From Octopus sinensis (taxonomy: Eukaryota), in NCBI RefSeq assembly GCF_006345805.1, contig NC_043003.1, positions 35,340,001 to 35,404,000 of the forward strand: 64,000 bases of DNA, read 5' to 3'. Positions 1 to 64,000 of the stretch are shown piece by piece. The position numbers and the translations under genes are program-made. Each line of letters begins with the position of its first letter. The stretch's first letter is position 1. The notes beneath the pieces are model-generated. The model saw only the letters and a list, made by a program, of their open reading frames with translations, did no database searches and was not told where the DNA came from.

Positions 1-164
1 GTGTATGTGTTAGTGAGTGTGTGTGGTGTGTGTTTTTATTTTAAGTATTCGATAACGCTGTTCTTTAATTACGGGTCAGCCCTGGTCGAGTAGACCTGTC
101 ACCATAAGCATTCTAGCCATGATACTTTAATTGTGAATACGATAATTAATAACTATTTCCGTTT

Positions 165-480
165 AAAGGCTGTGAGCGGGCAGAATCGTTAGCACGTCGG
201 GCAAAATGCTTAGTGGTATTTCGCCCCTCTTTATGTTCTGAGTTAAAATTACGCCGACATCGCACTTGCCTTTCATCCTTTCTGGATCGATAAAATAACT
301 ACCTCCTGAGCACTGAGGGTAGATGTAATCAAGTATCCCCACCCCCTATAATTTTAGATAATTTCAGACCTATAGTAGTAAGTTACATCCTTCCATTTGT
401 TGAAAACATTAAAATGAGATTTAAGAAAAAATTGGCTGCTATTTCTAACAAATCCGGCGACCAGCAGAACCTCCCTTGCG
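165..480 (+). mobile_element. SINE family A (head aaggc..gagc.ggcagaatcgttagcac)
   Basis: Same head and core (ttctgagttcaaatt..gcc.ttcatcct...gatcgataaaataa) as copies at 14881, 5025(-), 20380(-), 59390(-) and 61955(-). Confidence 0.75.
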
Positions 481-1884
481 TATCCATGTTTTTGTCTATA
501 TAAGTTGCTGGAGTATAGATATCATATGTGTGATAGATATATGTGCATTTTTATTAGTCTGGATTTACGTCTCGCTGTCAGCATGACCCTCAGCGTAGCT
601 GTGTGTATATATGTATGTACGAGTCCTTATGCATATTTGTACCGTTTCATCTCTTCAAAGATTACGTTTGTAATACAAAATGAATCTCGAATATTAAATG
701 TATATGTACGAGTGCGTATGTACGAAAGTCTATGTCTGCATGTATGTATTGATGTATGAATTGATGTATGAATAACTGAATATATATATATATATGTCTG
801 TGTTTATTTTCATTTGTGTGCAATATGTGAAATAGATTGTGTGTGTGTGTGAATGCTTTTGTTTATGACAAAACGTATTTCTATTAACGTTTACGTATTT
901 ATCTATTTGTGTTTTATTCGTTTTCACTTCGTCTGTTTTTATTAGTCTATATGCTTCTGTGTATGCATGAGGGTGAGTGTCTGTCTGCGTGTGCTTGTTC
1001 TTGTTCCTGCATGCGCTCTCGCTCGCGTGTGCGACTGACTTGATTGATTATACTAATAAGAAGAACCTTTTAAGTCGGATTATTGGACAGTCTCCCATGT
1101 GAAGTCGCTGTTATATGGGACGCTCCAGATCCGGGCCAATAGCGGCAACACACAACGGCACCTTGATCAAACAAACCACGTTAAATAATCGTTTGCGAAA
1201 CATAATGAAAGTTATTACGACATCATAGCTGATATCCGTGGGAGGCCGTGGAGTCGTAAGGTCAGCAACTGGAATATATACATATGTATATGTGTGTTCG
1301 TGTGTGTCTGTATGTTCGTGCGTGTGTGTGTGTTTTTGTGAGAGTGCGTATGGTATGTGTGTTTAATTGTATGTATGTGTCTCACATTAAACTTTTATTC
1401 GTGATTTCTTGAACATTTGCAACATTACGTATGTGTGCGTAAATGTGCGTAAGGTCCGTGTTATCGAGTGTAAATATTTGATGTGTAAATATTTGACGTG
1501 TCTACAAGTTTCTATATGTGTGTGTAAGTATGTAGTATTCACGACCATTTTCTCTGAAGATTCGTGTATAGATTCGTGCCTCTGTGTATAGATATATGCG
1601 TTTGTGTTCGCGCGCGTTAATGTGTGTGTTTCAGTTTACAGAATAGATGTGTTGTATTTTACTATTTGTAAATTTACATGTGTATAATTACGCACCTGTG
1701 TGGGATGAGGTGCATTGTATGTGTATGTGTTAGTGAGTGTGTGTGGTGTGTGTTTTTATTTTAAGTATTCGATAACGCTGTTCTTTAATTACGGGTCAGC
1801 CCTGGTCGAGTAGACCTGTCACCATAAGCATTCTAGCCATGATACTTTAATTGTGAATACGTTAATTAATAACTATTTCCGTTT

Positions 1885-2200
1885 AAAGGCTGTGAGCGGG
1901 CAGAATCGTTAGCACGTCGGGCAAAATGCTTAGTGGTATTTCGCCCCTCTTTATGTTCTGAGTTCAAATTACGCCGACATCGCACTTGCCTTTCATCCTT
2001 TCTGGATCGATAAAATAACTACCTCCTGAGCACTGAGGGTAGATGTAATCAAGTATCCCCACCCCCTATAATTTCAGATAATTTCAGACCTATAGTAGTA
2101 AGTAATACATCCTTCCATTTGTTGAAAACATTAAAATGAGATTTAAGAAAAAATTGGCTGCTATTTCTAACAAATCCGGCAACCAGCAGAACCTCCCTTG
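1885..2200 (+). mobile_element. SINE family A (duplicate of the 165-480 copy)
   Basis: Lies inside the tandem duplication and is near-identical to 165-480. Confidence 0.75.
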
Positions 2201-5024
2201 CGTATCCATGTTTTTGTCTATATAAGTTGCTGGAGTATAGATATCATATGTGTGATAGATATATGTGCATTTTTATTAGTCTGGATTTACGTCTCGCTGT
2301 CAGCATGACCCTCAGCGTAGCTGTGTGTATATATGTATGTACGAGTCCTTATGCATATTTGTACCGTTTCATCTCTTCAAAGATTACGTTTGTAATACAA
2401 AATGAATCTCGAATATTAAATGTATATGTACGAGTGCGTATGTACGAAAGTCTATGTCTGCATGTATGTATTGATGTATGAATTGCTGTATGAATAACTG
2501 AATATATATATATATATATATGTCTGTGTTTATTTTCATTTGTGTGCAATATGTGAAATAGATTGTGTGTGTGTGTGAATGCTTTTGTTTATGACAAAAC
2601 GTATTTCTATTAACGTTTACGTATTTATCTATTTGTGTTTTATTCGTTTTCACTTCGTCTGTTTTTATTAGTCTATATGCTTCTGTGTATGCATGAGGGT
2701 GAGTGTCTGTCTGCGTGTGCTTGTTCTTGTTCCTGCATGCGCTCTCGCTCGCGTGTGCGACTGACTTGATTGATTATACTAATAAGAAGAACCTTTTAAG
2801 TCGGATTATTGGACAGTCTCCCATGTGAAGTCGCTGTTATATGGGACGCTCCAGATCCGGGCCAATAGCGGCAACACACAACGGCACCTTGATCAAACAA
2901 ACCACGTTAAATAATCGTTTGCGAAACATAATGAAAGTTATTACGACATCATAGCTGATATCCGTGGGAGGCCGTGGAGTCGTAAGGTCAGCAACTGGAA
3001 TATATACATATGTATATGTGTGTTCGTGTGTGTCTGTATGTTCGTGCGTGTGTGTGTGTTTGTGTGTGTGTGTATGTGTGTAAACACAAAAGGTGGACAT
3101 GTACACAAGTAAACAAATATTAATACAAATATAATTTCGAGAACAAAAAAAATCGTAACTTCACATAGAATGTAAAAAAAAGGCAAAATAATAAAATATA
3201 AGTTCTTCATCACAAAAGAGACAACAACAGTAATTATCTGAATAATAAAGTGCAGCTACGCAGAACGAGGGGTGAACTGTTAGATATCAGAGAATTCACG
3301 ATACAGATTATATTTCCGAACTAGATTATGTTGTTCGTACACGTAGCTAATGCTGTCGGGAAAGACATAAGTAACACATCTGCCAAACTTATCGCTTTAA
3401 ATATAGGAACTTCATAAAAGATTGCTCGAACGAGCTGGATGATTTACCGAAAAATAGCATTTGCTTTTATGCGTGGAATCCTGTATGATATTTTAATTTT
3501 ATTTCAGTGGAATAAAAATGGTGGCGGTGGCATTGCTGCTTTTAGTGAGCTGATATTCACACACGTCACATGAAATTTCCGTTCACGAAATTGAAACAAA
3601 ATAATTCAAGGAAAAGAAAAAAGAAAGAAAGAAAAATTCAAATTTGTTGCAAACCTAATTCCTTTTTAACTTTTCTCTATAGTGGACGAACAGCAATGAC
3701 CACATAAGAAAAATATATCAGATAAGTAAAAGAAAAAAATATTCCTCGTATTTTATAAGGAGAACAAATGGGACGTACTGCTACTATCATCTAGACGAGC
3801 TTACGCAGATATTTTAAACCCCTTACACGCCAGCATTTTCGGTCCTGCATTAATTGAGGAAGGTTTTCAGAGAGGCATCAAGTGTCACTGGTGAGACGAT
3901 CTACATACATTATATTCGGAGGACCAGCTTGAGTACGGCCATACTTTGGTATCCATAGCAGTAGGTCAGTTACCAGCTCTTGTTTAGTTCATCAGAAATG
4001 TCCCACAAAGCGCAACTGTCTTTCTCTTATGATGATAGAAACAGACAGGACATACTGACACTCATATCTTTATATCAGATATTTACCATTTAAGCAATGT
4101 GTTGACTTCTGTTGAGTTACATCGAACACAACTATAGAAACCTTATATATACAGTGAATTATAGTACTGCGTGGTATTGTTCTATCACTATTTCTTTCAT
4201 ATTGATAACAACTGAGATCACTTCCCCGCACAAGAACACTCTTGATTCAATCACTTAATGACCTTTAAATCACCAAAAAGTACTAGGAAATTTTGTTTCG
4301 GACTCTCAGCCTTAGGTTTGGTGAAGAAAGGCATTATAAAACAGAACACACTACTTAATCTTATCGTCCTTTGAAGACTGGGAGATAAAACTGTCCTCGG
4401 TGAAATTTCATCCACAACGTTACTTGTAAGAATTAAATTCACAAGTGACGCAGTCTACCTAAATGATGTGAAATATCTATAAAGCTATATTCGAAGAACG
4501 AGGAATTGTATAAGCATACCAAAAGCACAGAATGAACATTTTTGTAAAGAGAAGGGAATAGTCAATTGAAATTATCCAATTAATTAGCAGTTACTTATTT
4601 TATTTACTTTAAAGGTATAAAAAGAAACTTCGTTGCTTTAAAATATCGATAGTAATCAAAGGATAAAACAAACATAATAAAAACACAAAAACAAAAAGAA
4701 AGAATATTCATCTGTGGTGTCGTTCAACCATATTTAAGAAACAACATAGACTATAAAATAAATATTTGGCTTTATTACACTGATATAAGGGCCTAGGTCT
4801 CATATTTTAACTGTAATGTTATATATTCATAACAGTAACTTTATTTAGCGCAAGATTTCATATGCTTCGGAAAGTCTTGTAGAATATATTTCTACACAAA
4901 TTGTATTTTATTGACCTGAAAGAAAATAGTTTCAGAAGACAGAGTAGGATCATTGGACTTTGAACTCAAAGTTTAGTGGGATGTAATTAAATATTGTGAA
5001 GATATCATAATGGTTTCAAATTTT

Positions 5025-18914: not shown

Positions 18915-19825
18915 ATAGGCATCCATCGGTCTTGAGAGGCCATGGATCTGCACCCAAAGAACTGCTGGTGGTAGTGCATCATCTGTTGTCGCCTTACAGG
19001 CCCACATGGGAGTGGCAATCCCGCATAGAGCGATTGCATTTGAAAGAGCCATCCGCCAATGATATTCTTTGATGTCGAGTACCTGTTTTTCTTTCGCTCT
19101 CTTCATTCCCTTTCATAGTATTTGCCTCCAGTATGGGCGATCATTTGTGGAGGCGCAATGTCCCAGTGGTTAGGGCAGCAAACTCGCGGTCGGAGGATCA
19201 CGGTTTCGATTCCCAGATCGGGCGGGTGTGTTTATTGAGCGAAAACACCTAAAGCTCCACGAAGCTGCGGCAGGGAGTGGTCGGGACCCCTGTTGTACTC
19301 TTTCGCCAAAACTTTCTCTCACTCTCTCTTCCTGTTTCTTGAGTAACTCTGCGTTGGACTAGCGTCCCGTCCAGCTGGGGGGAACACATACGCCACAGAA
19401 ACCGGGAAACCGAGCCCATGAGCCTGACTAGGCTTGAAAAGTGCGCATAAATAATAAATAATGGGCGATCATTTGCAACCTGCTCCCATCTCAGGAGGTC
19501 CAGATCAAGCGACTCCATATCTTTCTTACAGGCATCATTGGAACGAAGATGAGATCGTCCTCGTGCTCCTGTCCCAGTAACCAATTCCCCATACAGGAGG
19601 TCTTTTGGGATCCTTCCGTCTGGCATGCAATGAGCATGACCGAGTCAGTGCAAACGATGCTGCTGGAGCAAGATGTGTGTGCTGGGTATCTTGACTTGGT
19701 TGATGACTTCAGTGTTGGTAATGTTCGAAAATATAAGGACACAGATCGTGTGTTGTATAGCCAGCTGGAGACGATGTCTCCTGGAGCTAAACACAGCATG
19801 CATCCCAAAATGAGATTGCCATATT
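18915..19825 (-). mobile_element. RTE-clade LINE 3' fragment, interrupted by a SINE at 19148-19460
   Basis: MPDGRIPKDLLYGELVTGTGARGRSHLRSNDACKKDM matches the RTE ORF C-terminal pattern; homology resumes on the other side of the SINE and ends in ...ctcaagaccgatggatgcc. Confidence 0.8.
19148..19460 (+). mobile_element. SINE family C with 15-bp target-site duplication
   Basis: TSD atgggcgatcatttg at 19133-19147 and 19461-19475; A-box-like tgtcccagtgg, B-box-like ggtttcgattccc; (ATAA)n tail. Confidence 0.9.
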
Positions 19826-25863: not shown

Positions 25864-26045
25864 AAGAAAGTTGGTTTGTGAAAGCACGTGGTTGAATATA
25901 TAGAAAATAGTAAGAAGTGAAAAAACTACAGAAGGCTTAAATGTTAAAAAATATATATTTGCGTCAATATGTCTGAAGAATATAAAAAAAATTTTTGAAG
26001 AATATTAAAAAATTGTTTTTTCCCTCTTATAATGACATAATTTAG

Positions 26046-26084
26046 AAGAAAGACCGGTTTCGCGTTTAGCTTTTCAAATTTCTT
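26046..26084 (-). ncRNA. Identical minimal hammerhead-like motif in the inverted arm
   Basis: Exact reverse complement of 26482-26520. Confidence 0.6.
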
Positions 26085-26208
26085 GCGACGTTATGTTTAT
26101 GTTGAACAGGTTATCGTTATGTTTATGTTCACAAGAGTTCTAAATAAGGGGAGGAAATGAGTGATTTCTTCCGGTGTAAGGGAGATAATCGCTTAAAAAT
26201 TTTTAATC

Positions 26209-26316
26209 TTTCAATTTTTAATCTTTCCATTTTACCGATGTGCTATCGGATCATCAACACAAATTAGACTAAACAAGGAAACATTCTTCATTGAAAAGTA
26301 CAAGCCCAGACTTAAC
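26209..26316 (+). pseudogene. C-terminal fragment of a Penelope-like GIY-YIG endonuclease
   Basis: Translates FQFLIFPFYRCAIGSSTQIRLNKETFFIEKYKPRLN, matching the F.I.PFY...R..KE..FI.K.KP.LN end of PLE endonucleases (recalled pattern). Confidence 0.7.
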
Positions 26317-26481
26317 CATCCCAACATACTGATACAGAGAAATTCACACCAAGGGAAAGGAAAAAAATTTAAGCGATTATCTCCCTTACACCGGAAGAAA
26401 TCACTCATTACCTCCCCTTATTTAGAACTCTTTTGAACATAAACATAACGATAACCCTGTTCAACATAAACATAACGTCGC

Positions 26482-26520
26482 AAGAAATTTGAAAAGCTAA
26501 ACGCGAAACCGGTCTTTCTT
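26482..26520 (+). ncRNA. Minimal type I hammerhead-like ribozyme motif (variant core)
   Basis: AAGAAA-U-UUGAAAA-GC(UAAAC)GC-GAA-ACCGGU-C-UUUCUU: 6-bp stem I, 2-bp stem II, palindromic stem III; predicted cleavage after 26514. Confidence 0.6.
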
Positions 26521-26957
26521 CTAAATTATGTCATTAAAGAGGCAAAAAAAATTTTTTTAATATTCTTAAAAAATTTTTTTAATATTCTTCAGACATATTG
26601 ACGCAAATATATATTTTTTAACATTTAAGCCTTCTGTAGTTTTTTCACTTTTTACTATTTTCTATATATATATATATATATACAAAGTGAAAGTATTAAT
26701 AGTCACTATTAAAACTGAAATGATCTCACATTACAATAGAGGTGTTATACTGAAATAGTGTAAGAGATAAGAGATTGCTCCGGGATCGCATTAGGCAAGA
26801 AGTTGAAAAGTGTTTTTGGCCCATAACACTGCATGGATCCAAAGTAAGGCATGTATAAAATTTGAAATGAAATCGGTCGGGTAGTTCTCGAGTTTTAGTG
26901 ATACACGCCTACATCTACAAACACACACACACGCATACACATACATTCTCAGTTTTT

Positions 26958-26999
<42 letters not shown>

Positions 27000-29466
27000 T
27001 GAGTTCAAAATCATGATACGTTGTACCTTTGAGACAGGCACTTCATTTTACTTTGCTCTGGTTTACTAGCCTAATATGTGTATCAAATGGCTGCGGCTGT
27101 GGCACACTCCCTCTTCCAGTTTTTCCATTCTAGATGTGCCGCAGAGTTAAAGGATGCCTCTGTCAGCTTGAGATTACAGAGGTGCCAAAAACAATTAGTA
27201 AAAGCATTGTACATATTCCAAACGCTTAGAAGTTCGTGGGTGACGCCTACCTTCCGGAATGTTGTTCACAAAGATGATGACAAACTTTAAATAATAACGA
27301 GGCGTTGATTATATTTAGTTACGTCAGCTATCCGAATTATTACTATTACAATGATTAGTATTATGAAGATAAAGTTAATGATTATGATTTTGTGTGGATG
27401 ATAATGTACGTTACAGCTGCAAATATAACTGATCATGATATTGATAATGATAATGTTAATGATGACGATGTCAGAGATGATGATGAAGGTGACAATAACA
27501 ACGATATTTGTGACGGTGGCAATATTTGTGGCGGTAGAGTTTTGTGTTGGTAGTAGTGTTGAGGAAATGGTTAAGGCCTAACTACAATACTCATTTTGCT
27601 GAGCATGGCATTGCTAACGATGGCAACACCACTTCAAAGTTATAGTTTTACCACCCGTAGTACAATGTGTTTAAATCTGGCATAGTTCCGGCCAGAAAAG
27701 TGTGCTAAAGAGGAGGACAAAATTCCCATGAAAGCAATAACTCGAACATTTAATTAGAAATATTTCAATTTTGGTGTATTGAAATAAATGTTTGCCTCGG
27801 GGCGTAAAGAACATGGGTGTAAATCATGCAACTATTGGAATCTATTCAAGCAGTATACAGTTACAGTGACTGCAGAATAGCTGCATAACACGAAGCTGAA
27901 CTACACGACTGCAAAATAACTGCGTAATAAAACACGGAATTATACTGATATTCTGCTACACAAAAGGAGCTTGCATTAGTTTCACAAACAATGAAATTAA
28001 GTAGTCATAGCAGTAATTAACGTAACACCTGAGAAGAATAACTGTGATATGGTGTGAGAAAAGGCTAGCACTCACACAGATTTCCGCTATTTCTATAGAC
28101 TAATTTGCACCTTACAAGGCTTATGATGACCCGAGACTAAGCTAAAATATCCTGGGTTTCATGACTGGTACATTTACTACAATATCATAAACAATATTTC
28201 ACAAAACGATATACGTCACTAACAACACTACACAACACTATTTATATACCAAAATACACTACATTACAAATACAACACCACTCGTATATTTTACTATATA
28301 GCAATGAACTAAATAACAAATTATAATGCACTATATACATGACACTAAGCTCTACCACACAGACGTTTACACCGTATGACAAGACACATACCACAGTGTG
28401 TTACACAACACTACAATCACATATGAGATTATATGCATGCTCCCACAAATTGCTGGTTGAAATTCAGAATACTCTAGCATATTTCTGCTTTTCAGCGTTT
28501 AGATTGTATTTACAAAGTGTATATTATTCGTAATTGTCTTTTCGCTCTGAAAATTATAGCCTTTCGTGTGTACCACTTCAATGTTTACTGACATAAACAA
28601 GTACTCCAATAATTATTTATTCAAAACTAAATTCATAACCAAGGTAGGGAACATGAATATTTCGATGCAGTTGTCATTAAATAATGTTTTTTTCAGTGAT
28701 ATTGAAAGTAATAGGCACGTCTGTAAAGCTAAATTCAGTAACTGTTTTTACCGTCTTTTTTTTTTATAAGCTGCCATATTAAAGTTTTATGTTGGTGAAT
28801 TTAGAAGAATGTTAGAGGAAATATCCCACAAAATATTCTTGAGTTGATATATTTCCAGACTAGTCCTACGATAGTCATATTCTGTATAGTTTGAAAATCA
28901 TTATACTGCATTAGAATGAAGTAATTATTTATATGGGCAGCTATAGGCTTCTTGAAACATTTTCCAAAAAATATAACATTCAAAGTTCCGTTGAAGTGCC
29001 TTATTGTGTCTTTTATGCAACAGATAGATTGTTACTATCTCAAGCTATTCAATTAATAACGGCATAACCTTCAAATATATCAGAAAGTCAGGACAAGCTA
29101 CCTGGTTTGCACACATTAGTGTCAAACATAAATTATGTCAAAATATATTCAATAAATCCTATTCTGTATGCAGATTGTATTTTATCTAGATATTTATTAT
29201 CACATGTTACTCCAGCAATTCTGGAAATTACGTGGATCACCACTAAGGAGTGACTACTTCTTGTTTAGTTCATTCCTGATATGAAAGATCTTTTTCTCTT
29301 CTTTCTGTTTAACACTTGGAATTAGATTTGTTTTTGCTTCAGATGTTTATCAAATATTGTATAAATGATATGATACGGTATTCAATGGCAGTCTGGTTTC
29401 ATATTTATCTTCTGTGCCACTTCCATAATTTTTTCTAAGAAGGATCCTTACCACTATCGTTATATG

Positions 29467-29660
29467 AAGGGAAACTTCTAGTCTATTTAAAAATATTGCA
29501 GGCTGACTATCAGTGGAGTGAAATTATTCCAGATGAGACAAATGATTGTCCTGGAAATTGGAAAAAAATATGAACTTTGGAATGCTGTCTTGACATACCA
29601 GGAGACTTATATTGCGATATATTTGCAGGCATATTATAAGGCATGTATAATTAATGTACG

Positions 29661-29717
<57 letters not shown>

Positions 29718-29945
29718 TTACACACACATATATATATATACACGGAGATGTACATCTGTGATCGGGTACGTGTTTGAGGGTATTTGTACCTCCTTACGCG
29801 TGTAAGGCGAATATGTGCCTAAAGTTAGACATATCAGCGGTCTCCCCTCTCGATTTCTCTTTCCCTCACTCTCCTCATTTCTCTCCATAATATATATATA
29901 TAGATATGCATCTATATACGTATGTGTGCATATATATATATATAT

Positions 29946-29993
<48 letters not shown>

Positions 29994-30062
29994 ATAATAT
30001 ATATATAATATATCAGTATATATACATATATATGTATATATGTATATATGGATATATATATA

Positions 30063-30117
<55 letters not shown>

Positions 30118-30130
30118 CCATATATAATAT

Positions 30131-30186
<56 letters not shown>

Positions 30187-30411
30187 ATATATATATATAT
30201 GCACACATACGTATATAGATGCATATCTATATATATATATTATGGAGAGAAATGAGGAGAGTGAGGGAAAGAGAAATCGAGAGGGGAGACCGCTGATATG
30301 TCTAACTTTAGGCACATATTCGCCTACACGCGTAAGGAGGTACAAATACCCTCAAACACGTACCCGATCACAGATGTACATCTCCGTGTATATATATATA
30401 TGTGTGTGTAA

Positions 30412-30454
<43 letters not shown>

Positions 30455-30648
30455 CGTACATTAATTATACATGCCTTATAATATGCCTGCAAATATATCG
30501 CAATATAAGTCTCCTGGTATGTCAAGACAGCATTCCAAAGTTCATATTTTTTTCCAATTTCCAGGACAATCATTTGTCTCATCTGGAATAATTTCACTCC
30601 ACTGATAGTCAGCCTGCAATATTTTTAAATAGACTAGAAGTTGCCCTT
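29467..30648. repeat. ~1.18-kb spacerless palindrome centred on (TA)n at ~30084
   Basis: aagggaaacttctagtctattt (29467) pairs with aaatagactagaagttgccctt (30648). ORFs 29518(+) and 30597(-) start identically. Differences: 1 substitution, a 1-nt indel, CA-run length and a ~45-nt indel in the TA field. Confidence 0.95.
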
Positions 30649-30654
30649 GTAAAT

Positions 30655-30806
30655 TATGTAAATTATATTTTTGTATGTATTACATATTTTCGATGTATAT
30701 ATGAGAGTATATGCGCGCATATATGCATTTAGGCATAAAATTATTCTAAAAAATATTCTGAAAAGTTTTCATCAATCTAGCCCATCTCTCTTTTCTCCCT
30801 TCTCAG

Positions 30807-30843
<37 letters not shown>

Positions 30844-30895
30844 TTTATGTTTTTCACTGTTTGATTTGCCTAATGGTGGTTTTATCTCTAATTTA

Positions 30896-30926
<31 letters not shown>

Positions 30927-31080
30927 TGCTGAGAAGGGAGAAAAGAGAGATGGGCTAGATTGATGAAAACTTTTCAGAATATTTTTTAGAATAATTTTAT
31001 GCCTAAATGCATATATGCGCGCATATACTCTCATATATACATCGAAAATATGTAATACATACAAAAATATAATTTACATA
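30655..31080. repeat. Inverted repeat with identical 156-bp arms (30655-30810 / 30925-31080) around (TA)n-58 bp-(TA)n
   Basis: Read directly; no mismatch found between the arms. Confidence 0.95.
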
Positions 31081-31142
31081 CATACCTACATACACACATG
31101 CATACATAAACTTAAATATATGTACGTATTTGCACATATGTG

Positions 31143-31176
<34 letters not shown>

Positions 31177-32129
31177 AGTACTATTTCTATTCAATTCTCG
31201 TATTTTTGTACATCTTTCCTTGAATGTACAATTGTGAGATTTGCACGGAGAATAGCACGAACAAAAAAAAAGCGAAAACTTCATAAGAGAATAAAAAGAA
31301 AGTAAATCTGTAGACTTTAGAAGCAGATGCTTTCCTTGGATACTCACATACTACACATTCACGCACGCATGCATACTAATATGAATACCCCGATACATTA
31401 GATGACTGGCGGCCACACGCACACAGACAAATACACACACACACACACACGCACACACACATTGAAACACGCACTTTTATGCATGCGTTTACTTCTTAAG
31501 TATAGCTCGCCAGAACTTGATGGCGAATCGAACGGCATTGGAAGGCAAGCAGCCAAATCTGTGGCAGTGGTATGGGATAGACGGAAGCTAGATGGCAGAT
31601 CTTTACCACAGAAAGTGAGCTGCGTGCTTTATCTTCGATGTCTGATGTCCATTTGCCATAGTCACTAAGCATCGTCCGGTTTTTCCCGTATGTCAACTGG
31701 ACGTTATATCGGACATTAACTCTCTCACTCACCGATTTAGACATCTCGGTTTAATCGCCCATTCGTCGTCTGTTTGCCTACTTTAATTATGGTTGTTTGT
31801 CTTTCTGACTAATCTTATCTGGCTTGTTTTGTTGTTTTGTTTTCTTTATTTTAAGTATGAATGTGTGTACGTGTATATGTAGATGAACCTTTGTTTGTGT
31901 GTGTTAATATCAATAGAAGTGTATTTATGTACGCTTCTGAACATCCACGAGCGTGCTTAGTTTCTTTGTCCGTGACTGATAAAATTAATGTACGAGCCTA
32001 AACGTTTGTATATGAATATGCGCATGCGTATATGTATATGAGAGTGGATGTGAGCGTCTTCGCGTGTGTATATGCACATATTTAGGCATATATATATATA
32101 TATATATACATATATGTATATATATATAT

Positions 32130-33394
32130 AAGTAAGACGAGGGATATAATAACCAGGTAGATGCAGAATGTCTCTGAGTAAAAAGCCAAGGCCTGTTCCT
32201 TCTGATAGTGCATTATGTAATACTCACACACACGCTCACATGTATTTATCTAAGTGCGTGTACATATGTGTTTATCAAGTGAGCTTGTTTTGTATTAGTG
32301 TTCATATTACTGAAGATATATATGCCTGAGTAAGTTTGTGGAGAATAATGTAGAAATGTATAAAATAAGAATTAAGATTCAGATAAAAGTGAATCCTAAT
32401 TTCGTTTCTCTACTGAAAGCAATAACGGTTACGCCCACAACTTATAAACTCTTAAATTAAGTTTGCACATCCTCCTTCAGTACTAAACAATTTCGAATAT
32501 ATTCGTGGGGCACCATCATTTACAGAATTCTACCCTTAGTTATATTGACAGGATAGTTAATGAGTCATCATTACAAACATACGTTATGTATATTAACTGA
32601 TATTAAAATAGAGATCTTGAGAATAGTGTGTTTTTCAAAGATGAAAAGCCATACAGATATGAATCATTGTTGATGACACATATGCTGTAACAGTTCCTGA
32701 GACATAACTAAGCCAAAAGTTCATGAGGCATAGCCATTGCCAAAAGCACTTATCTACATATGTTGTGTTAGTACAACTTACTATTGTAAGGAACCAATAA
32801 AACTGGTTAATAATTTTGTAATTCCCTTTTCCTACATGTAAAATAAGCAATTCAAAATGATATCAGATAGACAAGTCGATAGTGCCCCGAGAAACCAATC
32901 AAGAGATTGGTGGCCCAAATCTGCCACTGGTACATTTTGTTCGTAGTAAATTAAACCCTCATATAACATAATTAGTATAGCTGAAAATAGAAGTTGTAGT
33001 TTGGAACATTTTTCTACCAAAGACAATTGCCTTACTATAAAATTGCTTAGTACTTACTAATGTGTAGTATTGCATGTACACGCACGACTTCTGGACGAAT
33101 AACTTCAATCGGACTCTTCTGAAAATACATTACATAAATAACGAGTTACCGTCATTTCTCATCCAGCATATTTATTAGCATGCCACTTCTAGACCAGCAG
33201 GAATGAGTCGAAAACTTTTTAGTGTATTTTTCCAATCCATCCTGAGATAAGGGGCGTCTGCAGGTAATCAAGCACGCCCCATGAATAGATTAAGCGACAG
33301 AAAGTACTTAAGAGAAAACTAATTTTGTTAGGTATGAAGTATGATGTTCGATTATTAATAAGTACGTTATGAAAGCGTCGAGTACTGAACTGCG

Positions 33395-33429
<35 letters not shown>

Positions 33430-34695
33430 TAAGACGAGGGATATAATAACCAGGTAGATGCAGAATGTCTCTGAGTAAAAAGCCAAGGCCTGTTCCTTCT
33501 GATAGTGCATTATGTAATACTCACACACACGCTCACATGTATTTATCTAAGTGCGTGTACATATGTGTTTATCAAGTGAGCTTGTTTTGTATTAGTGTTC
33601 ATATTACTGAAGATATATATGCCTGAGTAAGTTTGTGGAGAATAATGTAGAAATGTATAAAATAAGAATTAAGATTCAGATAAAAGTGAATCCTAATTTC
33701 GTTTCTCTACTGAAAGCAATAACGGTTACGCCCACAACTTATAAACTCTTAAATTAAGTTTGCACATCCTCCTTCAGTACTAAACAATTTCGAATATATT
33801 CGTGGGGCACCATCATTTACAGAATTCTACCCTTAGTTATATTGACAGGATAGTTAATGAGTCATCATTACAAACATACGTTATGTATATTAACTGATAT
33901 TAAAATAGAGATCTTGAGAATAGTGTGTTTTTCAAAGATGAAAAGCCATACAGATATGAATCATTGTTGATGACACATATGCTGTAACAGTTCCTGAGAC
34001 ATAACTATAGCCAAAAGTTCATGAGGCATAGCCATTGCCAAAAGCACTTATCTACATATGTTGTGTTAGTACAACTTACTATTGTAAGGAACCAATAAAA
34101 CTGGTTAATAATTTTGTAATTCCCTTTTCCTACATGTAAAATAAGCAATTCAAAATGATATCAGATAGACAAGTCGATAGTGCCCCGAGAAACCAATCAA
34201 GAGATTGGTGGCCCAATCTGCCACTGGTACATTTTGTTCGTAGTAAATTAAACCCTCATATAACATAATTAGTATAGCTGAAAATAGAAGTTGTAGTTTG
34301 GAACATTTTGCTACCAAAGACAATTGCCTTACTATAAAATTGCTTAGTACTTACTAATGTGTAGTATTGCATGTACACGCACGACTTCTGGACGAATAAC
34401 TTCAATCGGACTCTTCTGAAAATACATTACATAAATAACGAGTTACCGTCATTTCTCATCCAGCATATTTATTAGCATGCCACTTCTAGACCAGCAGGAA
34501 TGAGTCGAAAACTTTTTAGTGTATTTTTCCAATCCATCCTGAGATAAGGGGCGTCTGCAGGTAATCAAGCACGCCCCATGAATAGATTAAGCGACAGAAA
34601 GTACTTAAGAGAAAACTAATTTTGTTAGGTATGAAGTATGATGTTCGATTATTAATAAGTACGTTATGAAAGCGTCGAGTACTGAACTGCGTAAT
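32130..34695. repeat. Tandem duplication, period 1297 bp (32130-33398 / 33427-34695), each copy flanked by (TA)n
   Basis: agtaagacgaggg at 32131 and 33428; tgcgtaat at 33391 and 34688. I saw only 2 single-base indels and 1 substitution. Confidence 0.95.
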
Positions 34696-34783
34696 ATATA
34701 TATATATATATACACACGTACATACATACATACATACATGTGTGTTTGTGTGCGTGTACACGCGCATGCGTGTCTGTGCGTGC

Positions 34784-35390: not shown

Positions 35391-35839
35391 CTTCTGCCAC
35401 AAAGCAGAGGAACCATGGTGTAACCCACTATGGTGTGGCAAACTTTCAGACCCTAGTCTAGATTGTGAATCCTCTGTACCCCAAGATGGTTCGGCTGTCG
35501 ACCCGTTAAAAGCCACCGTTTACGGAATGAGAATAACAATGTTGCTTTCGCGCCCGTTCAACCGCCAGTCCCTTGCATGTAGTGGGTGGATCTTCAAGTT
35601 GCCACACGCATTCTTAGTAGCTTAGAGGAGGCTCGAATTAGAGATTATTCTTTGTGACTAATGGCGTGAGTCTTGACTGGAAGAAGAAGAAGAAGACAGC
35701 AGCAAAAATAAATATATAATTGCAGTGCTGAAAAGTGAAGTGAGCAACATTGTACGAGATGGTAGTGAGCTCCTGAAGAAGCACTCTCTTCCTGATGATC
35801 TCCTTTACAGCCGCGAAACGGCTGGGGTCTCTTACCTCA

Positions 35840-36571
35840 GAGAAGACCTGGATGGAAAACACTCAGTATACAAAAGAAAGAGACTATGCATAGGTATGCT
35901 ACCCGGAAGCTTGAAGATGACAATAGAATCGACACGAAGCGCAGCCTCTCTTGGACATAAGACCAACCGCATGTGTAGGAGGCCATGTCATGTCTCTGTG
36001 GAAGACATCACGCATGTGATTAGCGGCTGTTCTAAAAAATGTCGATAGAGTACTACCTCCCTATGCGGCATGATGTTGTTGCTAAAACAATTTACACTGA
36101 CATCCGCAAAAAGACTGTCCGGAAATATACTCAGTAAATCTCACTCTTATGGAATACATTCATAAACGCCAACTCAAGGAATACTGGTGGAATATTCCTA
36201 TCAAAACCTCTGTCAAATGTAACCATAACAGACCGGATATTGCTGTTTGGGACAGAGGGGCAAAGGTCTGTTTCATCATAGTGGTCAGCTGCCCTGCAGA
36301 TATAAATATCTCTTTGAAAATCAAAGAACAAGAGGATATCTGTAGACAACTGATTCGAAACTTCCAGCTTCTATATACAGACTATGAATTCATATTCATA
36401 CCAATAATAATTAGAGCACTAGGTTTTGTTAGTAAATGCTTAAAGAAGATTCTGGATAAACTGGGATTTTCAGAGAGAGAAATCGACCGACTAATTCGTA
36501 CTTTACAAGTGCAATCTGGACGTAGTGGAACAGTAAATATATGCAAGACTTTTCTCAAATTCCAAATGTGA
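35840..36571 (+). mobile_element. 3' part of a non-LTR retrotransposon with restriction-like endonuclease (R4/NeSL-type), frameshifted
   Basis: Zinc knuckle CHVSVEDITHVISGC, then YYLPMRHDVVAKTIY, then RPDIAVWD...CFIIVVSCP.D.N (PD-(D/E)xK-type), IPIIIRALG and terminal KTFLKF. Confidence 0.8.
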
Positions 36572-40564: not shown

Positions 40565-41474
40565 TTTTATATAAAATTTCATATAGGGACCGTCGAACAT
40601 TTCGCGAATTGTTAAAAAGTATCACAAAAGTATAGCTCCCAAAATGACTGCAGAGCTTAATGACGGCCTCGAGTACCCAGTTTCCACAAAAAACTGTTCG
40701 CCAAGAGCTGCACAAAGCCGGATCTCACGGGAGGGTTGCAACCAGAAAACTACTACATTCAAAAACAAACGTTGCAAAGCGTTTAGAGTGGAGTAAAAAC
40801 CTACAGAATTGGTCCCTAGAGTAGTGGAAGAATGTTATTTTCTTGGACGAGTCATCCTTTACCTTATTTCTGACCACCGGCTGAGTATATGTGTGGAGAC
40901 AACCAAAAGAAGCATTTGACCCAGAGTGCTTTCTTCCAACTGTTAAACATAGAGGAAGATCTGTAATGATCTAAGGGCTTTATCTTCGACATTCTCGGTC
41001 CAGTGCTTTCCTTTCATGGCAGAATTAATATTCAAGACTATTTAAACATTTCATTTGATGAAATTCATCCTAAGTTTGCGGAACTGTTTCCGGAGGGAAA
41101 CGCAATCTTTCAGGATGATAATACACCAATTAATACAGCTAAAGTTGTTACTGAATGGCACGAGGAACATTCTAGTGAAGTTGATCATCTTATCCCGCCA
41201 ACACAGGCACCAGATCTTAATATTATTGAACATTTATGGTGCATATTCGAAAAACAAGTAAGGAGCTGACATCCTCCACCATCATCACTACAAGAACTGG
41301 TGACAGTTTTAGTTGAAGAATGGACAAATATTCCTTTGGAAACAATTCAAACATTGCATGAGTCCATATCTCGTAGAATTTAAGCTGTAACTACTGCCAA
41401 AGGCGCTCCTACTCCATATTAAAATATATCTGTTTGAAATTTTGTGGTGTTTCCATTATTTTGTCCAATCCCTG
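40565..41474 (+). mobile_element. 5'-truncated Tc1-family (DD34E) transposon, inactivated
   Basis: WKNVIFLDESSF, TVKHRGRSVMI*G, FQDDNTP...PDLNIIEHLW; right TIR ...ccattattttgtccaatccctg|TA. Confidence 0.85.
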
Positions 41475-42084: not shown

Positions 42085-43115
42085 AACAGACAAAATTTGG
42101 CATCGTGATCTCAACATGTATCTGCAGAAAAAATAGTTTGGCTCCCAAGGATTTTCATACTGATATGTTTGCTACATTAGAGGATGGTATTCCAGGTATA
42201 TGAATAGTGCAAAGAGTGTAGCTGAATTTAAGGAGAAAGGGAGAGTCTTAAAGACAACCCACTGTCTGGAGGTCCTGCATCTGCTACAACTGAGGAAAGC
42301 ATTGACCATGTTTACCGCATGTAATGGATTTACCACATGGTAAATCAAAGAACCAATGCTATTAGCATAATCCCTGAGGGAGTTGAGAATATTCTGCACA
42401 GTGAACATGACATGTCTCCTCGGTGGGCGTCACGACTTCTGTCACCTAAATGAAAAATGCATCAAGCTGATCTCATCACGGAAAAATCTGACATTGCTTA
42501 AGGTAGATCCAGCTGGTTTTCCTTGAACGTTTCTAACCCTGATTGAGAGATGGATTCATCACAAATAGACAATCCACGCATTGATAACATCTCTCCTCAC
42601 CTGCTTCAAAGAAGGCCAAGACCGCTTCATCTGCATGGAAGATGATGGCCTCAGAATTTGGGGTTGCAAAAGACATAGAATTTATTTACTATCTTCAAAA
42701 GGGCCACACCATCAACGGGTTGTACTATGCCAACTGGTTAAGGCTTTTACGAAAGGCTATCAAGAAAAAATGCTCAAAAATAACTGAGGAAATGGGTTTG
42801 CTTTCATTAGGCTAGTGCTCCAGCACACAAGGACTTGATTTCAATGGGTTTTGCACGTGACTGTAGCCTTGAACTGTTTGATCAACCTCCCTATCTTCCT
42901 GATTTCGCCATATCTATCATCTGTTCCACAACATAGAATAAAAAACACTTGATTCTAAACCAGTGATGATAACATCATATCTTCTGTTGAGACTTTTACG
43001 ACCAACAGGATGAAAGCTTCTTCACCAAGCACTGTAAAATCGATTCAATTACTGTAAAACCGAATGTAGAAGTGTGTGTACCGCACAGGGGACTATGTTG
43101 AAACCTAATACTCAT
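42085..43115 (+). mobile_element. Degraded mariner (irritans-like) element
   Basis: Broken peptides KIWHR...YLQKK, ESLKDNP.SGGP, GKMMASEF, ...KCV.RTGDYVE. Confidence 0.7.
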
Positions 43116-53200: not shown

Positions 53201-54010
53201 GTAGTACTACACCTGACAAGAGCAAACTTGGGAGTAGTAACACCTAAGGTGTAACTTCATACTACTTTAGTTTTTAAACTCCGTATATTGAGTCTCAGTA
53301 CTCGATAAAATTTAATATTTTGGAAAGGATATATTTAATATTAATATTTTTAAAAGGCCATGTGTGTTTTTCTTTGAACTACGATTAATAAAACTAAGAT
53401 ATATATTCACACATTTATATGATTGCACAGGTATGTGCTTCTGTTGTCTTATAAATAGACTGGAAAGTCCTGGGGTACAAACATTTGGATTTGGAAATGT
53501 TTATGCATTTTAAAATACTATTATTAATGTAACATAAAGGAGTAGGACCTGAAAATTGAAACTGGCAACTAATATCATTGTGAATAGCATGAATGTAGCA
53601 AGTCACCTTTAAAACACAATTAAACATTTGAATATTTGGACTCTGAACATATGCTGGAAGCAAAAGCCTGCGCTTTAATGTTTATAGCAGTGACCAAAAA
53701 TGCTGAAACTAAATTCTTCTTGCTTCCTTTTCTATATTCCTTACGATGTGAGTTCTAACCCGAAGATGGGCTTTGTAGATGGACTGGTCCATTTCAGAGT
53801 TATATCTCCAGATCAATTAAAGCAATCCTGCAGTTTCAACAACAGTTGTAATTTGATAACGCTTGTACTTTTTTGTCACTTAGAACAGAATACATAAATT
53901 TAGAATAAAATAATTTAAAACAAATTTCTAAAATGATGAGGAAATGTGCTTAACTCTTAATCTTCTGCAAACTCCATAATAAGCATGTAACTAATTCTTA
54001 TATTTAACAA

Positions 54011-54720: not shown

Positions 54721-55791
54721 TGGGATTATATTTGATGTGAAAGAAGGCAAAATATTATATGTTCCCCGGAGGTTGTGTATATATGAATAAGGGTGCCATC
54801 AATAAGCTCAGTCAGCCTACTACTATTATTTTAGTTTTTTGGTCTTAGCCCAACAGTCATCGGGTGCAGTCATGATCAGTGGCATTTCTGCTGTAACCAT
54901 CTTGTCTGTTTAAATACGACTATATTATACTGTCAGTTTAGTGTATCCTCTCAGTTTAGTTCGTAGGGTTTGCTTTAAGGGAGATTTTGTGTTATATCCA
55001 GGAGATTGAATGAATGTACTGAGGGATCACTTATTACTATATGCAATCTCCGGGTGCATATAATATTTTGTCTTCTTTTCCATTAAATATCAACCCATTA
55101 TTAAATATAAGTATGAGTTATTTACATGTTTATCATGGAGTTTGCAGAAGATTGAAAGTTAAGCACGTTTCCTCGTAATTTTAGAAATTGGTTTGAAATT
55201 ATTTTATTCTACGTACATATATTCTGTCCTTAGTGAAAAAGATACCAACTTCATCAAATTACAACTGCTGTCGAAACCGCTGGACTGAGTTAATTGATCA
55301 GGAGACATAACTCTGAAATGTATCAGTCCATCTACATGTAAATAGGCATCATGTTGAGATACAATTTATTGCTCTTTTTTAAATAGATCTCTATAATTAT
55401 TAAGTTCTGTTAATTTGAATTACTACACAATATATATACACATTCACATCCCATCAGATACAGAGACTCACCATCCTAGACATATGCATACATAAACTAA
55501 TAGATATATACGTGCGTACATGCATACCATATACATGCATGCATATTATCAGGACAAATTCTGTGAGAGAATGCAGAGGAAGATTGCAATATGCACGTTT
55601 CAATTATAGTTCACAGAAGCGAAAGGGGGGCATGAAGTATTTCCTTTATATGACTATGAATAGGCTTTCTCGCCATCGCAAAGACTACAAAAACAATAAC
55701 TAAATTTCATAAAAGCGCCTTACGGCCGAAAACTCGGAGTGCATCTCAAGAGCGGAGTCTATGTATCTATGCGTTTATGCATATATATATC

Positions 55792-56399: not shown

Positions 56400-56830
56400 A
56401 CTACTCCTGTATGTAACTTTGTCTCAGCTGTTGGCCCAGTTGATGTATAAGGGACTTTGATTCTTCTGCCCTCGTCTACACTTCATTTCGGGTTGTTGGT
56501 TCATCCAGTATTGTGGAGAGTGTGAGGTTAGTTCCTTTTTGAAGACATCTACTTCCACGTTAAGTACATTTCAAAATTTTTGTGGCTTGTTATTGAAGAG
56601 CTGTGGGCCTTGAACCCTAGTCTATGCCAGTAACTGGTCCTGAATTTTGATGGAGTGAATGGTACATTTGGGACAATACAATGGTGGCCAGTTCTAGAAT
56701 TTCTACAACACTCAATGCCGAAATTAGGTACGAGCCCTTCTAGAGTTTTCCACATGTAGATTATTACATATCTGTCACGCCTTCGCTCCAGGGAGAAAAG
56801 TTGCAGTTTTCTCAGCCTATCCCCGTAGCT
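56400..56830 (-). mobile_element. CR1-like LINE ORF2 3' fragment
   Basis: YGDRLRKLQLFSLERRRDRYVIIYMWKTLEGLVPN, then VDVFKKEL...STILDEPTT...SLIHQ. Confidence 0.85.
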
Positions 56831-56861
56831 CATCTGCTGCACTGTTTCAATCTATTTAGTG

Positions 56862-62085: not shown

Positions 62086-62389
62086 GAAATGTCCCTGATA
62101 TTGCAATATACGATAACACTGTCACGCTAATGATTTTTAACAGAGATAATAGTCCAGATATTCTATTATTAGCTGGGTTCGATTTAATAATAATTTTGAT
62201 GATTCTTCTTCGATCGACGTTGGATAAAATTTTATTCAGGTGGGAAGGCAGTTCCCACGAAAATAGTAGTCTTTTGGAACTGGAAAGTAGAAGGGTAAGA
62301 AGACATAGTCTGCAAACCAGGTACTTGCTACGAATGCTCGCAGCAAACTAAACATTAGTTAAGGCAGTCTAGGTGTGAATTGGCATATA

Positions 62390-63679: not shown

Positions 63680-64000
63680 TACACTACAACACCGTATAGC
63701 AACACAGCATCACACCACAATTAGCATACAATGCATGCCACATATCATACCAGGACATATCCCATTCAACTCAAAACGCCAAACAATAAGTAAAGTAATT
63801 TAGTGCATCTCCGTCTATTCGGATGAGTAGGGGGCTTGAGTTGTCCGATCAAGTGAATCAACATGTTAGCTAAATTGAATTAGAGTATGAGGAATCCAGT
63901 CATAGTTTTAACGTGATTATCAAGTAGCATCAAAGTGACACAATACGTGACAAAGCTCTAGGTCTTAATTATATGTACAAAGCTTTCGAGAGCTTTCTGT

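What the first reader, a model, noticed from the sequence alone, without database searches (positions are those of the whole stretch)
29467..31080. Back-to-back double fold-back: B-rc(B)-junction-rc(C)-spacer-C
Seen: a spacerless 1.18-kb palindrome ends at 30648 and a second inverted repeat starts 6 nt later at 30655; both turn at (TA)n. Deleting the two inner arms leaves a simple locus B-(TA)n-spacer-(TA)n-C. Inference: one double-strand break or cruciform cut in the TA array, each 3' end folding back and self-priming (~600 and ~190 nt), followed by end joining. This would be a giant P-nucleotide-like footprint. Established: long (TA)n extrudes cruciforms and is fragile. Alternative: a library or assembly chimera.
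Basis: partly seen in the sequence, partly recalled or inferred. Interest (0 to 1): 0.75.

Follow-up and report, generated by a model that had tools for sequence, protein, structure and literature searches.

The report
Double fold-back duplication at TA repeat
Two unrelated stretches of an animal genome have each been copied backwards next to themselves, both turning at a TA repeat and meeting 6 bases apart, which looks like the scar of one chromosome break repaired by hairpin-primed copying at both ends; this is a known kind of repair in an unusually large two-sided form, and it cannot be confirmed without reads or a second allele.

Summary
Inverted repeat B spans 29467-30648. Its arms, 29467-29954 and 30178-30648, differ by one substitution and three slippage indels. 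Inverted repeat C spans 30655-31080, and its copied parts, 30655-30809 and 30926-31080, are identical. Only GTAAAT (30649-30654) separates the two inner arms, and it lies inside a 9-nt tandem duplication. Both repeats turn at (AT)n tracts. C has a 58-nt unique loop. B has a 159-nt, 94% A+T core that is mirrored only in part, so "spacerless" is only roughly right.

Chance gives inverted-repeat arms of 13-18 nt. None of the 26 other TA arrays in the window has inverted flanks. No target-site duplication and no further copy of B or C was found.

A long TA array broke once, each 3' end snapped back on a TA tract and copied its own flank (about 470 and 155 nt), and the two copies were then joined. 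The "giant P-nucleotide" analogy fails for C, because its loop is not duplicated.

The window alone cannot exclude serial replication template switching, an amplification or assembly chimera, or two fold-back transposons. No allele, read or related locus could be retrieved. I rate this a large, two-sided variant of known fold-back inversions, of moderate interest.

The parts
29467..29954 (+). B outer arm (presumed original), 488 nt. It contains (CA)32 at 29664-29728.
   Evidence: it pairs with 30178-30648 and differs by 1 substitution and 3 slippage indels.
29955..29982 (.). (AT)14 tract next to the B outer arm (presumed template for snap-back pairing).
29983..30141 (.). TA-rich core of B, 159 nt and 94% A+T. 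The axis is at 30083/30084, with a perfect 64-nt palindrome at 30052-30115. A roughly 45-nt variant-rich stretch (about 30000-30045) has no mirror image.
30142..30177 (.). (AT)18 tract next to the B inner arm (presumed 3' primer tract at the left break end).
30178..30648 (-). B inner arm (presumed copy), 471 nt. Relative to the outer arm it is shorter by 14 nt in (CA)n, by 1 nt and by 2 nt, and it carries one substitution at 30643.
30649..30654 (.). Junction filler GTAAAT. Together with T30648 and TA30655-56 it forms the first unit of a 9-nt tandem duplication, TGTAAATTA (30648-30656 and 30657-30665).
   Evidence: Read directly. It matches neither the B arm nor the C arm.
30655..30809 (-). C inner arm (presumed copy), 155 nt, identical to 30926-31080.
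30810..30841 (.). (AT)16 tract (presumed 3' primer tract at the right break end).
30842..30899 (+). Unique 58-nt loop of C, present once and not mirrored.
30900..30925 (.). (AT)13 tract next to the C outer arm (presumed template for snap-back pairing).
30926..31080 (+). C outer arm (presumed original), 155 nt. Its outer end lies in a degenerate (ACAT)n tract that runs on into the right flank (31076-31110).

Best explanation
This is the scar of one double-strand break in a long, imperfect TA array in an animal germline.

Inferred ancestral locus: B - (AT)14 - TA-rich core - (AT)n | (AT)n - 58-nt loop - (AT)13 - C, about 0.9-1.0 kb.

Inferred steps:
1. The break fell in the central (AT)n tract. 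If nothing was lost, the tract was about (AT)34, that is 18 + 16 units.
2. After 5' resection, each 3' tail ended in (AT)n.
3. Each tail snapped back on TA sequence of its own strand.
4. Each tail was extended using its own flank as template, making an inverted copy of B (about 470 nt beyond the TA tracts) and of C (155 nt).
5. The two new 3' ends were unwound and joined. A 9-nt slip-and-recopy (TGTAAATTA x2) and about 1 nt of microhomology left the 6-nt filler GTAAAT.

What is shown: the four-arm anatomy, the TA tracts at both turns, the unique loop in C, the junction duplication and the near-identity of the arms.

What is inferred: the break itself, which arms are the copies, the polymerase and joining pathway, and that the event was single.
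For: - Anatomy: two unrelated inverted repeats whose inner arms lie 6 nt apart. With three high-identity inverted repeats placed at random in 64 kb, an adjacency of 10 nt or less is expected about once in 1000 (my arithmetic).
- One novel junction suffices, and it carries a templated 9-nt tandem duplication.
- Both turns lie between (AT)n tracts of unequal length (14/18 and 16/13). That is expected if one tract is the primer and the other the template.
- The 58-nt loop of C is unique and unmirrored.
- The copied parts are young and of compatible age: B has 1 substitution and 1 non-SSR indel in about 335 non-SSR nt, and C has 0 in 155.
- All three indels are contractions in the inner B arm.
- None of the 26 other pure TA arrays of 20 nt or more in the window has inverted flanks.
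- No target-site duplication was found, and no other copy of B or C in the window, L001 or L002.
- Precedent: yeast breaks give local fold-back inversions of 2 to about 150 bp through a hairpin with a 41-nt loop, Pol delta synthesis, unwinding and NHEJ or alt-EJ capture (PMC11724301). Snap-back SD-MMEJ is described in PMC5728401. (AT)34 and expanded TA repeats form cruciforms and break (PMC12972899 and PMC9890227).
- A 1.3-kb tandem duplication 1 kb downstream (32100-34712, 99.6%) has TA arrays at all three boundaries. TA arrays are evidently rearrangement sites in this region.
Against: - No independent molecule, allele or orthologue was seen, so the ancestral simple locus is purely inferred.
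- Published local fold-back insertions sealed by end joining reach about 150 bp. Here they are about 155 and 470-565 nt, and at both ends at once.
- Which arm is the copy cannot be polarised without an outgroup. The contraction bias has a 1-in-8 chance of arising at random.
- The partial asymmetry of the B core needs an extra 45-nt slippage deletion or a pre-existing small palindrome.
- The source organism and the sequencing technology are unknown.
Confidence: 0.5

Rival explanations
1. Serial replicative template switching (FoSTeS, MMBIR or fork U-turn) with no two-ended break. A stalled nascent strand makes a U-turn in the TA array and copies B backwards. It then jumps by microhomology to the far end of C and copies C backwards. 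A second U-turn between the (AT)13 and (AT)16 tracts lets it resume forward synthesis.
For: This gives exactly the same product (my reasoning). TA tracts are self-complementary, so they can pair in either orientation. The neighbouring TA-bounded tandem duplication shows that TA-mediated template or partner exchange happens here. The 9-nt junction duplication also fits polymerase slippage.
Against: It needs three ordered switches, including a strand-inverting jump of about 1 kb. The break model needs two symmetric, independent snap-backs and one joining. The final sequence cannot separate the two models.
Confidence: 0.15
2. Library or assembly artefact. The candidates are an inverted chimera from whole-genome amplification (phi29 MDA), or snap-back of TA-ended fragments during amplification, carried into the consensus.
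For: Whole-genome amplification is known to create palindromic inverted chimeras in long reads (PMC6218980 and PMC13265396). TA-ended 3' tails would snap back readily. Apart from one substitution, the arm differences are of the homopolymer or microsatellite type that sequencing errors produce. The technology and depth behind the window are unknown.
Against: It needs three switch points within 1.6 kb of a single molecule, and that molecule has to win the consensus. Read-level palindromes usually run for kilobases to the molecule's end, not 155-565 nt with unique DNA on both sides (general knowledge). None of the 26 other TA arrays is affected. A walk through a self-complementary TA node of a de Bruijn graph cannot create the unique-to-unique junction at 30648/30655. 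Other young duplications in the window differ by substitutions as well as indels.
Confidence: 0.15
3. Two unrelated fold-back or MITE-like transposable elements, each with long terminal inverted repeats and a central TA microsatellite, inserted side by side.
For: The window carries transposon debris: a mariner, Tc1-like and LINE fragments, and a third 310-nt-arm inverted repeat at 25896-26669. C could be read as a TA-flanked element, TA|TGTAAATT...AATTTACA|TA. The copy-number test had almost no power, with only 64 kb plus 41 kb searched.
Against: There is no target-site duplication longer than the trivial TA for C, and none for B. B and C share no sequence. The B arms contain a (CA)32 array and ordinary-looking unique DNA. 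Random adjacency within 6 nt has a probability of about 1e-3. No other copy was found in the window, L001 or L002, in metagenome, prokaryote-genome or viral contigs, or among predicted proteins.
Confidence: 0.12
4. The mirror-image history. The inner segment rc(B)-GTAAAT-rc(C) is native DNA between two TA arrays. Two separate breaks, one in each array, each made a one-sided fold-back copy outwards.
For: The adjacency of the inner arms would then be native and need no explanation. The (ACAT)n continuity at 31076-31110 could equally be a microhomology junction.
Against: It needs two events and two novel junctions. The two independent copy tracts would have to stop within 6 nt of each other without overlapping, a chance of about 1 in 60. 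The 9-nt tandem duplication would sit at that point by coincidence.
Confidence: 0.05

Closest known systems
Local fold-back (snap-back) inversions at double-strand breaks: yeast Pol delta plus NHEJ/alt-EJ events (PMC11724301) and SD-MMEJ snap-back synthesis in Drosophila (PMC5728401)
   Same: An inverted copy lies directly beside its template. The turn is at a short self-complementary sequence, with a loop of tens of nucleotides (41 nt in yeast, 58 nt for C). The far end of the copy is joined to the other break end with 0-5 nt of microhomology or templated filler.
   Different: The published events are 2 to about 150 bp, mostly under 34 bp, and are described as one-sided. Here the copies are about 155 and 470-565 nt, at both ends of the presumed break, and apparently present in an assembled animal genome. 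The pairing sequence is a long (AT)n tract, not a 4-10-nt microhomology.
Large fold-back inverted duplications: human inv-dup-del (PMC3907307), yeast foldback inversions (PMC7467729, PMC10622511) and cancer fold-back inversions
   Same: Hairpin priming of a resected 3' end, with a short single-copy spacer between the inverted arms.
   Different: Those events run on to give dicentric or terminally deleted chromosomes and duplications of kilobases to megabases. Here synthesis stopped after a few hundred nucleotides, and the two ends were rejoined locally with no loss of flanking DNA.
Palindromic AT-rich repeats (PATRRs) of human chromosomes 11, 17 and 22 (PMC4940405)
   Same: A near-perfect palindrome several hundred bp long with an AT-rich centre, predicted to extrude a cruciform. 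B (1.18 kb) would be expected to behave like one.
   Different: PATRR arms are AT-rich throughout and their origin is unknown. The B arms are ordinary DNA with a (CA)n array. No polymorphism or translocation data exist for this locus.
Chains of short insertions from break-adjacent DNA in breakage-replication/fusion (PMC12807874)
   Same: Short pieces (median 184 bp) that come from DNA right next to a broken end are joined in chains at a repair junction, with microhomology or filler between them.
   Different: Those pieces land at other junctions, in either orientation, in cancer-type chromothripsis. Here each piece stays attached to its own source through a TA turn.
P nucleotides and hairpin-opening footprints (V(D)J coding ends, hAT excision sites)
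   Same: A palindromic addition next to a break end.
   Different: P nucleotides are a few nt long and come from off-centre nicking of a covalently sealed hairpin, which mirrors everything up to the tip. The 58-nt loop of C is not mirrored, so that mechanism does not fit C.

Membership tests
Fold-back (hairpin-primed) inverted duplication at a DNA break | The inverted copy lies immediately beside its template. | tested here: met
   true of both B and C.
Fold-back (hairpin-primed) inverted duplication at a DNA break | The turn is at a self-complementary or short inverted sequence, with no spacer or a short single-copy spacer. | tested here: met
   B: (AT)14 and (AT)18 around a 159-nt TA-rich core. 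C: (AT)16 and (AT)13 around a 58-nt unique loop.
Fold-back (hairpin-primed) inverted duplication at a DNA break | The distal end of the copy is joined to the other break end with little microhomology or templated filler. | tested here: met
   the 6-nt filler GTAAAT lies within the 9-nt tandem duplication TGTAAATTA x2 at 30648-30665.
Fold-back (hairpin-primed) inverted duplication at a DNA break | Derived state: a simple allele without the inner arms exists or existed. | not testable with these tools
   No copy of B or C was found in any searchable collection. No reads are available.
Fold-back (hairpin-primed) inverted duplication at a DNA break | Dependence on repair synthesis and end-joining factors (Pol delta or Pol theta, Ku/Lig4 or alt-EJ). 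| not testable with these tools
   This needs genetics in a model organism.
MITE or Foldback transposable element | A target-site duplication flanks the terminal inverted repeats. | tested here: not met
   B flanks...TTATATG | GTAAAT.... C flanks...GTAAAT | CATACC.... Only a trivial internal TA is possible for C.
MITE or Foldback transposable element | Multiple dispersed copies with conserved termini. | tested here: inconclusive
   No other copy in the 64-kb window or the 41 kb of L001 and L002, and none in the metagenome, prokaryote-genome or viral collections. The source genome itself could not be searched.
Palindromic AT-rich repeat (PATRR-like) | A near-perfect palindrome of several hundred bp with an AT-rich centre. 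| tested here: met
   for B. The arms themselves are not AT-rich repeats.
Palindromic AT-rich repeat (PATRR-like) | Size and symmetry polymorphism, and breakage or translocation at the centre. | not testable with these tools
   No population data.
Amplification or assembly chimera | The junction is supported by a single molecule or by amplified libraries only. | not testable with these tools
   No reads, and the window's source is not in the contig index.
Amplification or assembly chimera | Systematic effect: other TA arrays show the same turn-around. | tested here: not met
   the 26 other pure TA arrays of 20 nt or more share 0-5 inverted 14-mers across the array, against 134-369 at this locus.

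The most novel reading that the evidence does not exclude
Long TA arrays in this genome may be recurrent turn-around sites. A single break would be healed by snap-back synthesis at both ends, creating in one step a pair of long hairpin-forming palindromes from ordinary DNA. That would be a general birth mechanism for PATRR-like palindromes, fold-back or MITE-like structures and potential hairpin-RNA loci. It would also mean that end joining can capture fold-back tracts of several hundred nucleotides in an animal germline.
Probability: 0.12. Interest if true: 0.7.

Novelty: new variant of a known kind. Interest (0 to 1): 0.4.

Why it matters
If the structure is real, it is a natural example in an assembled animal genome of a repair outcome known mainly from yeast and fly reporters and from cancer genomes. 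It would show that both ends of one break can snap back on TA tracts, that synthesis can run for hundreds of nucleotides, and that the break can still be closed locally.

It would also offer a concrete route by which long cruciform-prone palindromes arise de novo at fragile TA microsatellites. The origin of human PATRRs is unexplained. The idea is testable genome-wide: search for arm-(TA)n-loop-(TA)n-arm pairs that sit back to back.

If the structure is an artefact, it is a useful pattern to screen for in assemblies of SSR-rich genomes.

Tried and rejected
**Searches for independent evidence, all negative**
- Exact-product look-ups of window ORFs found nothing.
- Exact 26- and 30-mers of B and C had 0 hits in metagenome contigs, prokaryote genome contigs and viral contigs.
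- A 683-aa concatenation of all non-repetitive reading frames across 29150-31420, including frames that span the left boundary, the junction and the right boundary, had 0 hits among 5.8 billion predicted proteins.

**Identifying the organism**
- The mariner ORF at 62632-63273 has homologues of 85-91% identity in ENA and Logan contigs.
- Two long contigs fetched through them, L001 and L002, share only the mariner with the window. L001 has a different composition. They are not usable as same-genome controls.
- A LINE fragment gave one unnamed hit.
- Rfam found nothing at gathering thresholds.

**Readings rejected**
- A de Bruijn-graph walk through a self-complementary TA node: it cannot create the unique-to-unique junction at 30648/30655.
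- A false haplotype duplication of an inversion: B has no TA array on its left side.
- Off-centre opening of a sealed hairpin as the common mechanism: the loop of C is not mirrored.
- A piggyBac-like end for B: no TTAA and no CCC...GGG termini.
- A cluster of nested inverted repeats in L001 (12237-14186): a transposon nest without TA arrays, in what looks like another genome, so not a parallel case.

Full report
**1. What is there**

The window is AT-rich (about 35% G+C) and full of dinucleotide microsatellites. It carries a decayed mariner (Pfam Transposase_1, E = 1e-23) and Tc1-like and LINE fragments. It is animal nuclear DNA. I could not identify the species.

At the reported coordinates, the repeat finder and a self-BLAST recover the two inverted repeats exactly as described. 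B spans 29467-30648 and C spans 30655-31080. The 6 nt GTAAAT (30649-30654) lie between them.

**2. Refined anatomy**

*C.* C is simple. A 155-nt arm (30655-30809) is identical to 30926-31080. The arms are followed inward by (AT)16 (30810-30841) and (AT)13 (30900-30925). These enclose a 58-nt loop (30842-30899) that occurs once and has no mirror image. As single-stranded DNA, C folds into one hairpin of -194 kcal/mol, against -35 +/- 3.6 for shuffles.

*B.* B was called a spacerless 1.18-kb palindrome. A global alignment shows that the non-microsatellite parts are essentially identical, while the central TA-rich 350 nt are only roughly symmetric. If the arms are taken as 29467-29954 and 30178-30648, they differ by just four events:
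- one substitution, 6 nt from the outer end (29472/30643)
- a (CA)7 length difference
- one 1-nt indel (29804)
- one AT-unit indel (29930-31)

All three indels make the inner arm shorter.

Between the B arms lie (AT)14 (29955-29982), a 159-nt core that is 94% A+T, and (AT)18 (30142-30177). The core has a perfect 64-nt palindrome centred at 30083/30084. It also has two pairs of mirrored non-TA markers, GG30050/CC30118 and TT30069/AA30097. But it has a roughly 45-nt variant-rich stretch (about 30000-30045) with no counterpart on the right.

There are two ways to read this. B may be a true spacerless palindrome that later lost, or skipped during copying, about 45 nt on one side. Or B may have the same arm-(TA)-loop-(TA)-arm layout as C, with a small older palindrome in its loop. 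I cannot decide between them, and the main inference does not depend on the choice.

**3. More than chance, and not systematic**

Thirty Markov-1 simulations of the window gave longest inverted arms of 13-18 nt within 3 kb. The window has 32 pure TA arrays of 20 nt or more. The six inside the locus share 134-369 inverted 14-mers across the array. The other 26 share 0-5. So TA arrays in this assembly do not routinely acquire turn-arounds.

**4. The junction**

The sequence reads ...GCCCT[TGTAAATTA][TGTAAATTA]TATTTTTG.... The first unit consists of the last base of the B arm, the 6-nt filler and the first two bases of the C arm. The filler is therefore a re-copy of the adjacent C sequence. Templated insertions of this kind are typical of synthesis-dependent end joining (PMC5728401 and PMC11724301).

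**5. Best explanation**

One break in a long TA array explains everything with a single new junction. After resection, each 3' tail ends in (AT)n. Each tail pairs with TA sequence further back on its own strand and is extended along its own flank. The two extended ends are then unwound and joined.

The unequal TA tracts (14/18 and 16/13) are expected if one is the primer and the other the template. The unique loop of C is the hairpin loop. The abutting inner arms are the two newly made ends.

The inferred ancestral locus is about 0.9-1.0 kb. If nothing was lost, the broken tract was about (AT)34. That is the length range at which AT repeats form cruciforms and break in yeast and human cells (PMC12972899 and PMC9890227).

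The yeast work gives a direct mechanistic precedent. It describes a fold-back with a 41-nt loop, Pol delta synthesis, unwinding and capture by NHEJ or alt-EJ, with tracts of 2 to about 150 bp (PMC11724301).

The arm divergences of B and C are compatible with one age. B has 1 substitution and 1 non-SSR indel in about 335 non-SSR nt. C has 0 in 155.

Which steps are shown and which are inferred is set out under Best explanation.

**6.

A P-nucleotide-type origin means a covalently sealed hairpin nicked far from its tip. That would mirror everything up to the tip, including the loop. The 58-nt loop of C is present once only, so at least that side was made by annealing between two separate TA tracts. 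"Spacerless" holds for B only loosely.

**7. Rivals**

(a) *Serial replicative template switching.* Two U-turns in TA tracts plus one microhomology jump yield the identical sequence. This cannot be separated from the break model here.

(b) *Amplification or assembly chimera.* Whole-genome amplification makes inverted chimeras (PMC6218980 and PMC13265396), and most of the arm differences are of a type that sequencing errors produce. Three points argue against it. It needs three switch points within 1.6 kb of a single molecule that then wins the consensus. The 26 other TA arrays are unaffected. And a graph walk through a TA node cannot create the unique-to-unique junction.

(c) *Two fold-back transposons side by side.* I found no target-site duplication, no shared sequence, no other copies in what I could search and an unlikely adjacency. 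The copy-number test had little power, however.

(d) *Mirror history.* The inner segment would be native, with two independent outward fold-backs. This needs two events whose tracts stop 6 nt apart.

**8. Context noticed**

Within 5 kb upstream there is a third, older inverted repeat (25896-26204 and 26361-26669, 96%, 156-nt spacer). Its inner ends lie at A5T5-like self-complementary runs and its outer ends at TA runs.

One kb downstream, a 1.3-kb tandem duplication (32100-33415 and 33397-34712, 99.6%) has TA arrays at all three boundaries. Another direct repeat (1-1340 and 1721-3066, 99.1%) is bounded by GT-rich microsatellites. Young duplications bounded by dinucleotide repeats therefore seem common here. 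This favours a biological origin.

**9. Limits**

All attempts to find a second copy, allele or read-level support failed:
- exact-product look-ups
- exact-word scans of metagenome, prokaryote-genome and viral contigs
- a protein search with concatenated frames spanning all three boundaries

The window's source is not in the protein or contig index, since the best mariner hit is only 91% identical. Contigs L001 and L002 share only the mariner with the window.

**10. Verdict**

The mechanism class is known (fold-back inversion at a break). What is unusual is the size, the two-sidedness, the TA-tract pairing and the apparent presence in an assembled animal genome. Novelty: a new variant of a known kind. 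Interest: 0.4.

Noticed in passing
window 32088-34712: A young 1.3-kb tandem duplication (32100-33415 and 33397-34712, 99.6% identical; 3 substitutions and 2 single-base indels). TA arrays sit at the left end, at the junction (33397-33427) and at the right end. The layout is TA-unit-TA-unit-TA, 1 kb downstream of the finding.
   Followed up: partly
window 25896-26669: A third inverted repeat, with 310-nt arms (25896-26204 and 26361-26669), 96% identity and a 156-nt spacer. The inner ends lie at A5T5/A7T3 self-complementary runs and the outer ends abut TA runs. It could be an older one-sided fold-back or a microsatellite-associated MITE. No other copy was found in the window.
   Followed up: partly
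window 1-3066: A 1.34-kb direct repeat (1-1340 and 1721-3066, 99.1%) whose boundaries lie in GT-rich microsatellites. The first copy may be cut by the window edge.
   Followed up: no
window 30048-30121: A small nested palindrome inside the TA core of B: a perfect 64 nt at 30052-30115, plus mirrored GG/CC and TT/AA markers. It could be an earlier small fold-back, or the true axis of B.
   Followed up: partly
window 62388-63681: A decayed mariner-family transposon on the minus strand (Transposase_1 domain; the frame is broken between the 246-aa and 98-aa pieces). It is about 92% identical in DNA to copies on ENA contigs ERZ25067889:ctg48598 and ERZ25073763:ctg127491, which otherwise share nothing with the window.
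   Followed up: partly
window 19252-19644, 35677-36568, 40970-41266, 42588-42812, 56552-56851: Fragments of LINE-type (reverse-transcriptase C-terminal region) and Tc1/mariner-type coding sequence. No intact gene was recognised anywhere in the 64 kb. I assigned these by eye from the translations. Pfam found nothing for the two fragments I scanned (19249-19626 and 36149-36571).
   Followed up: no
window 53774-54010 / 55098-55336: An older inverted repeat (about 240-nt arms, 83% identity, 1.09-kb spacer), possibly the terminal repeats of a decayed DNA transposon.
   Followed up: no
L001 12237-14186: A nested cluster of three high-identity inverted repeats (a b ... b' c ... c' a', 97.6-98.6% identity) 1.4 kb from a mariner copy on an ENA metagenome-assembly contig. 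It has no TA arrays and looks like a transposon nest in a different genome.
   Followed up: partly
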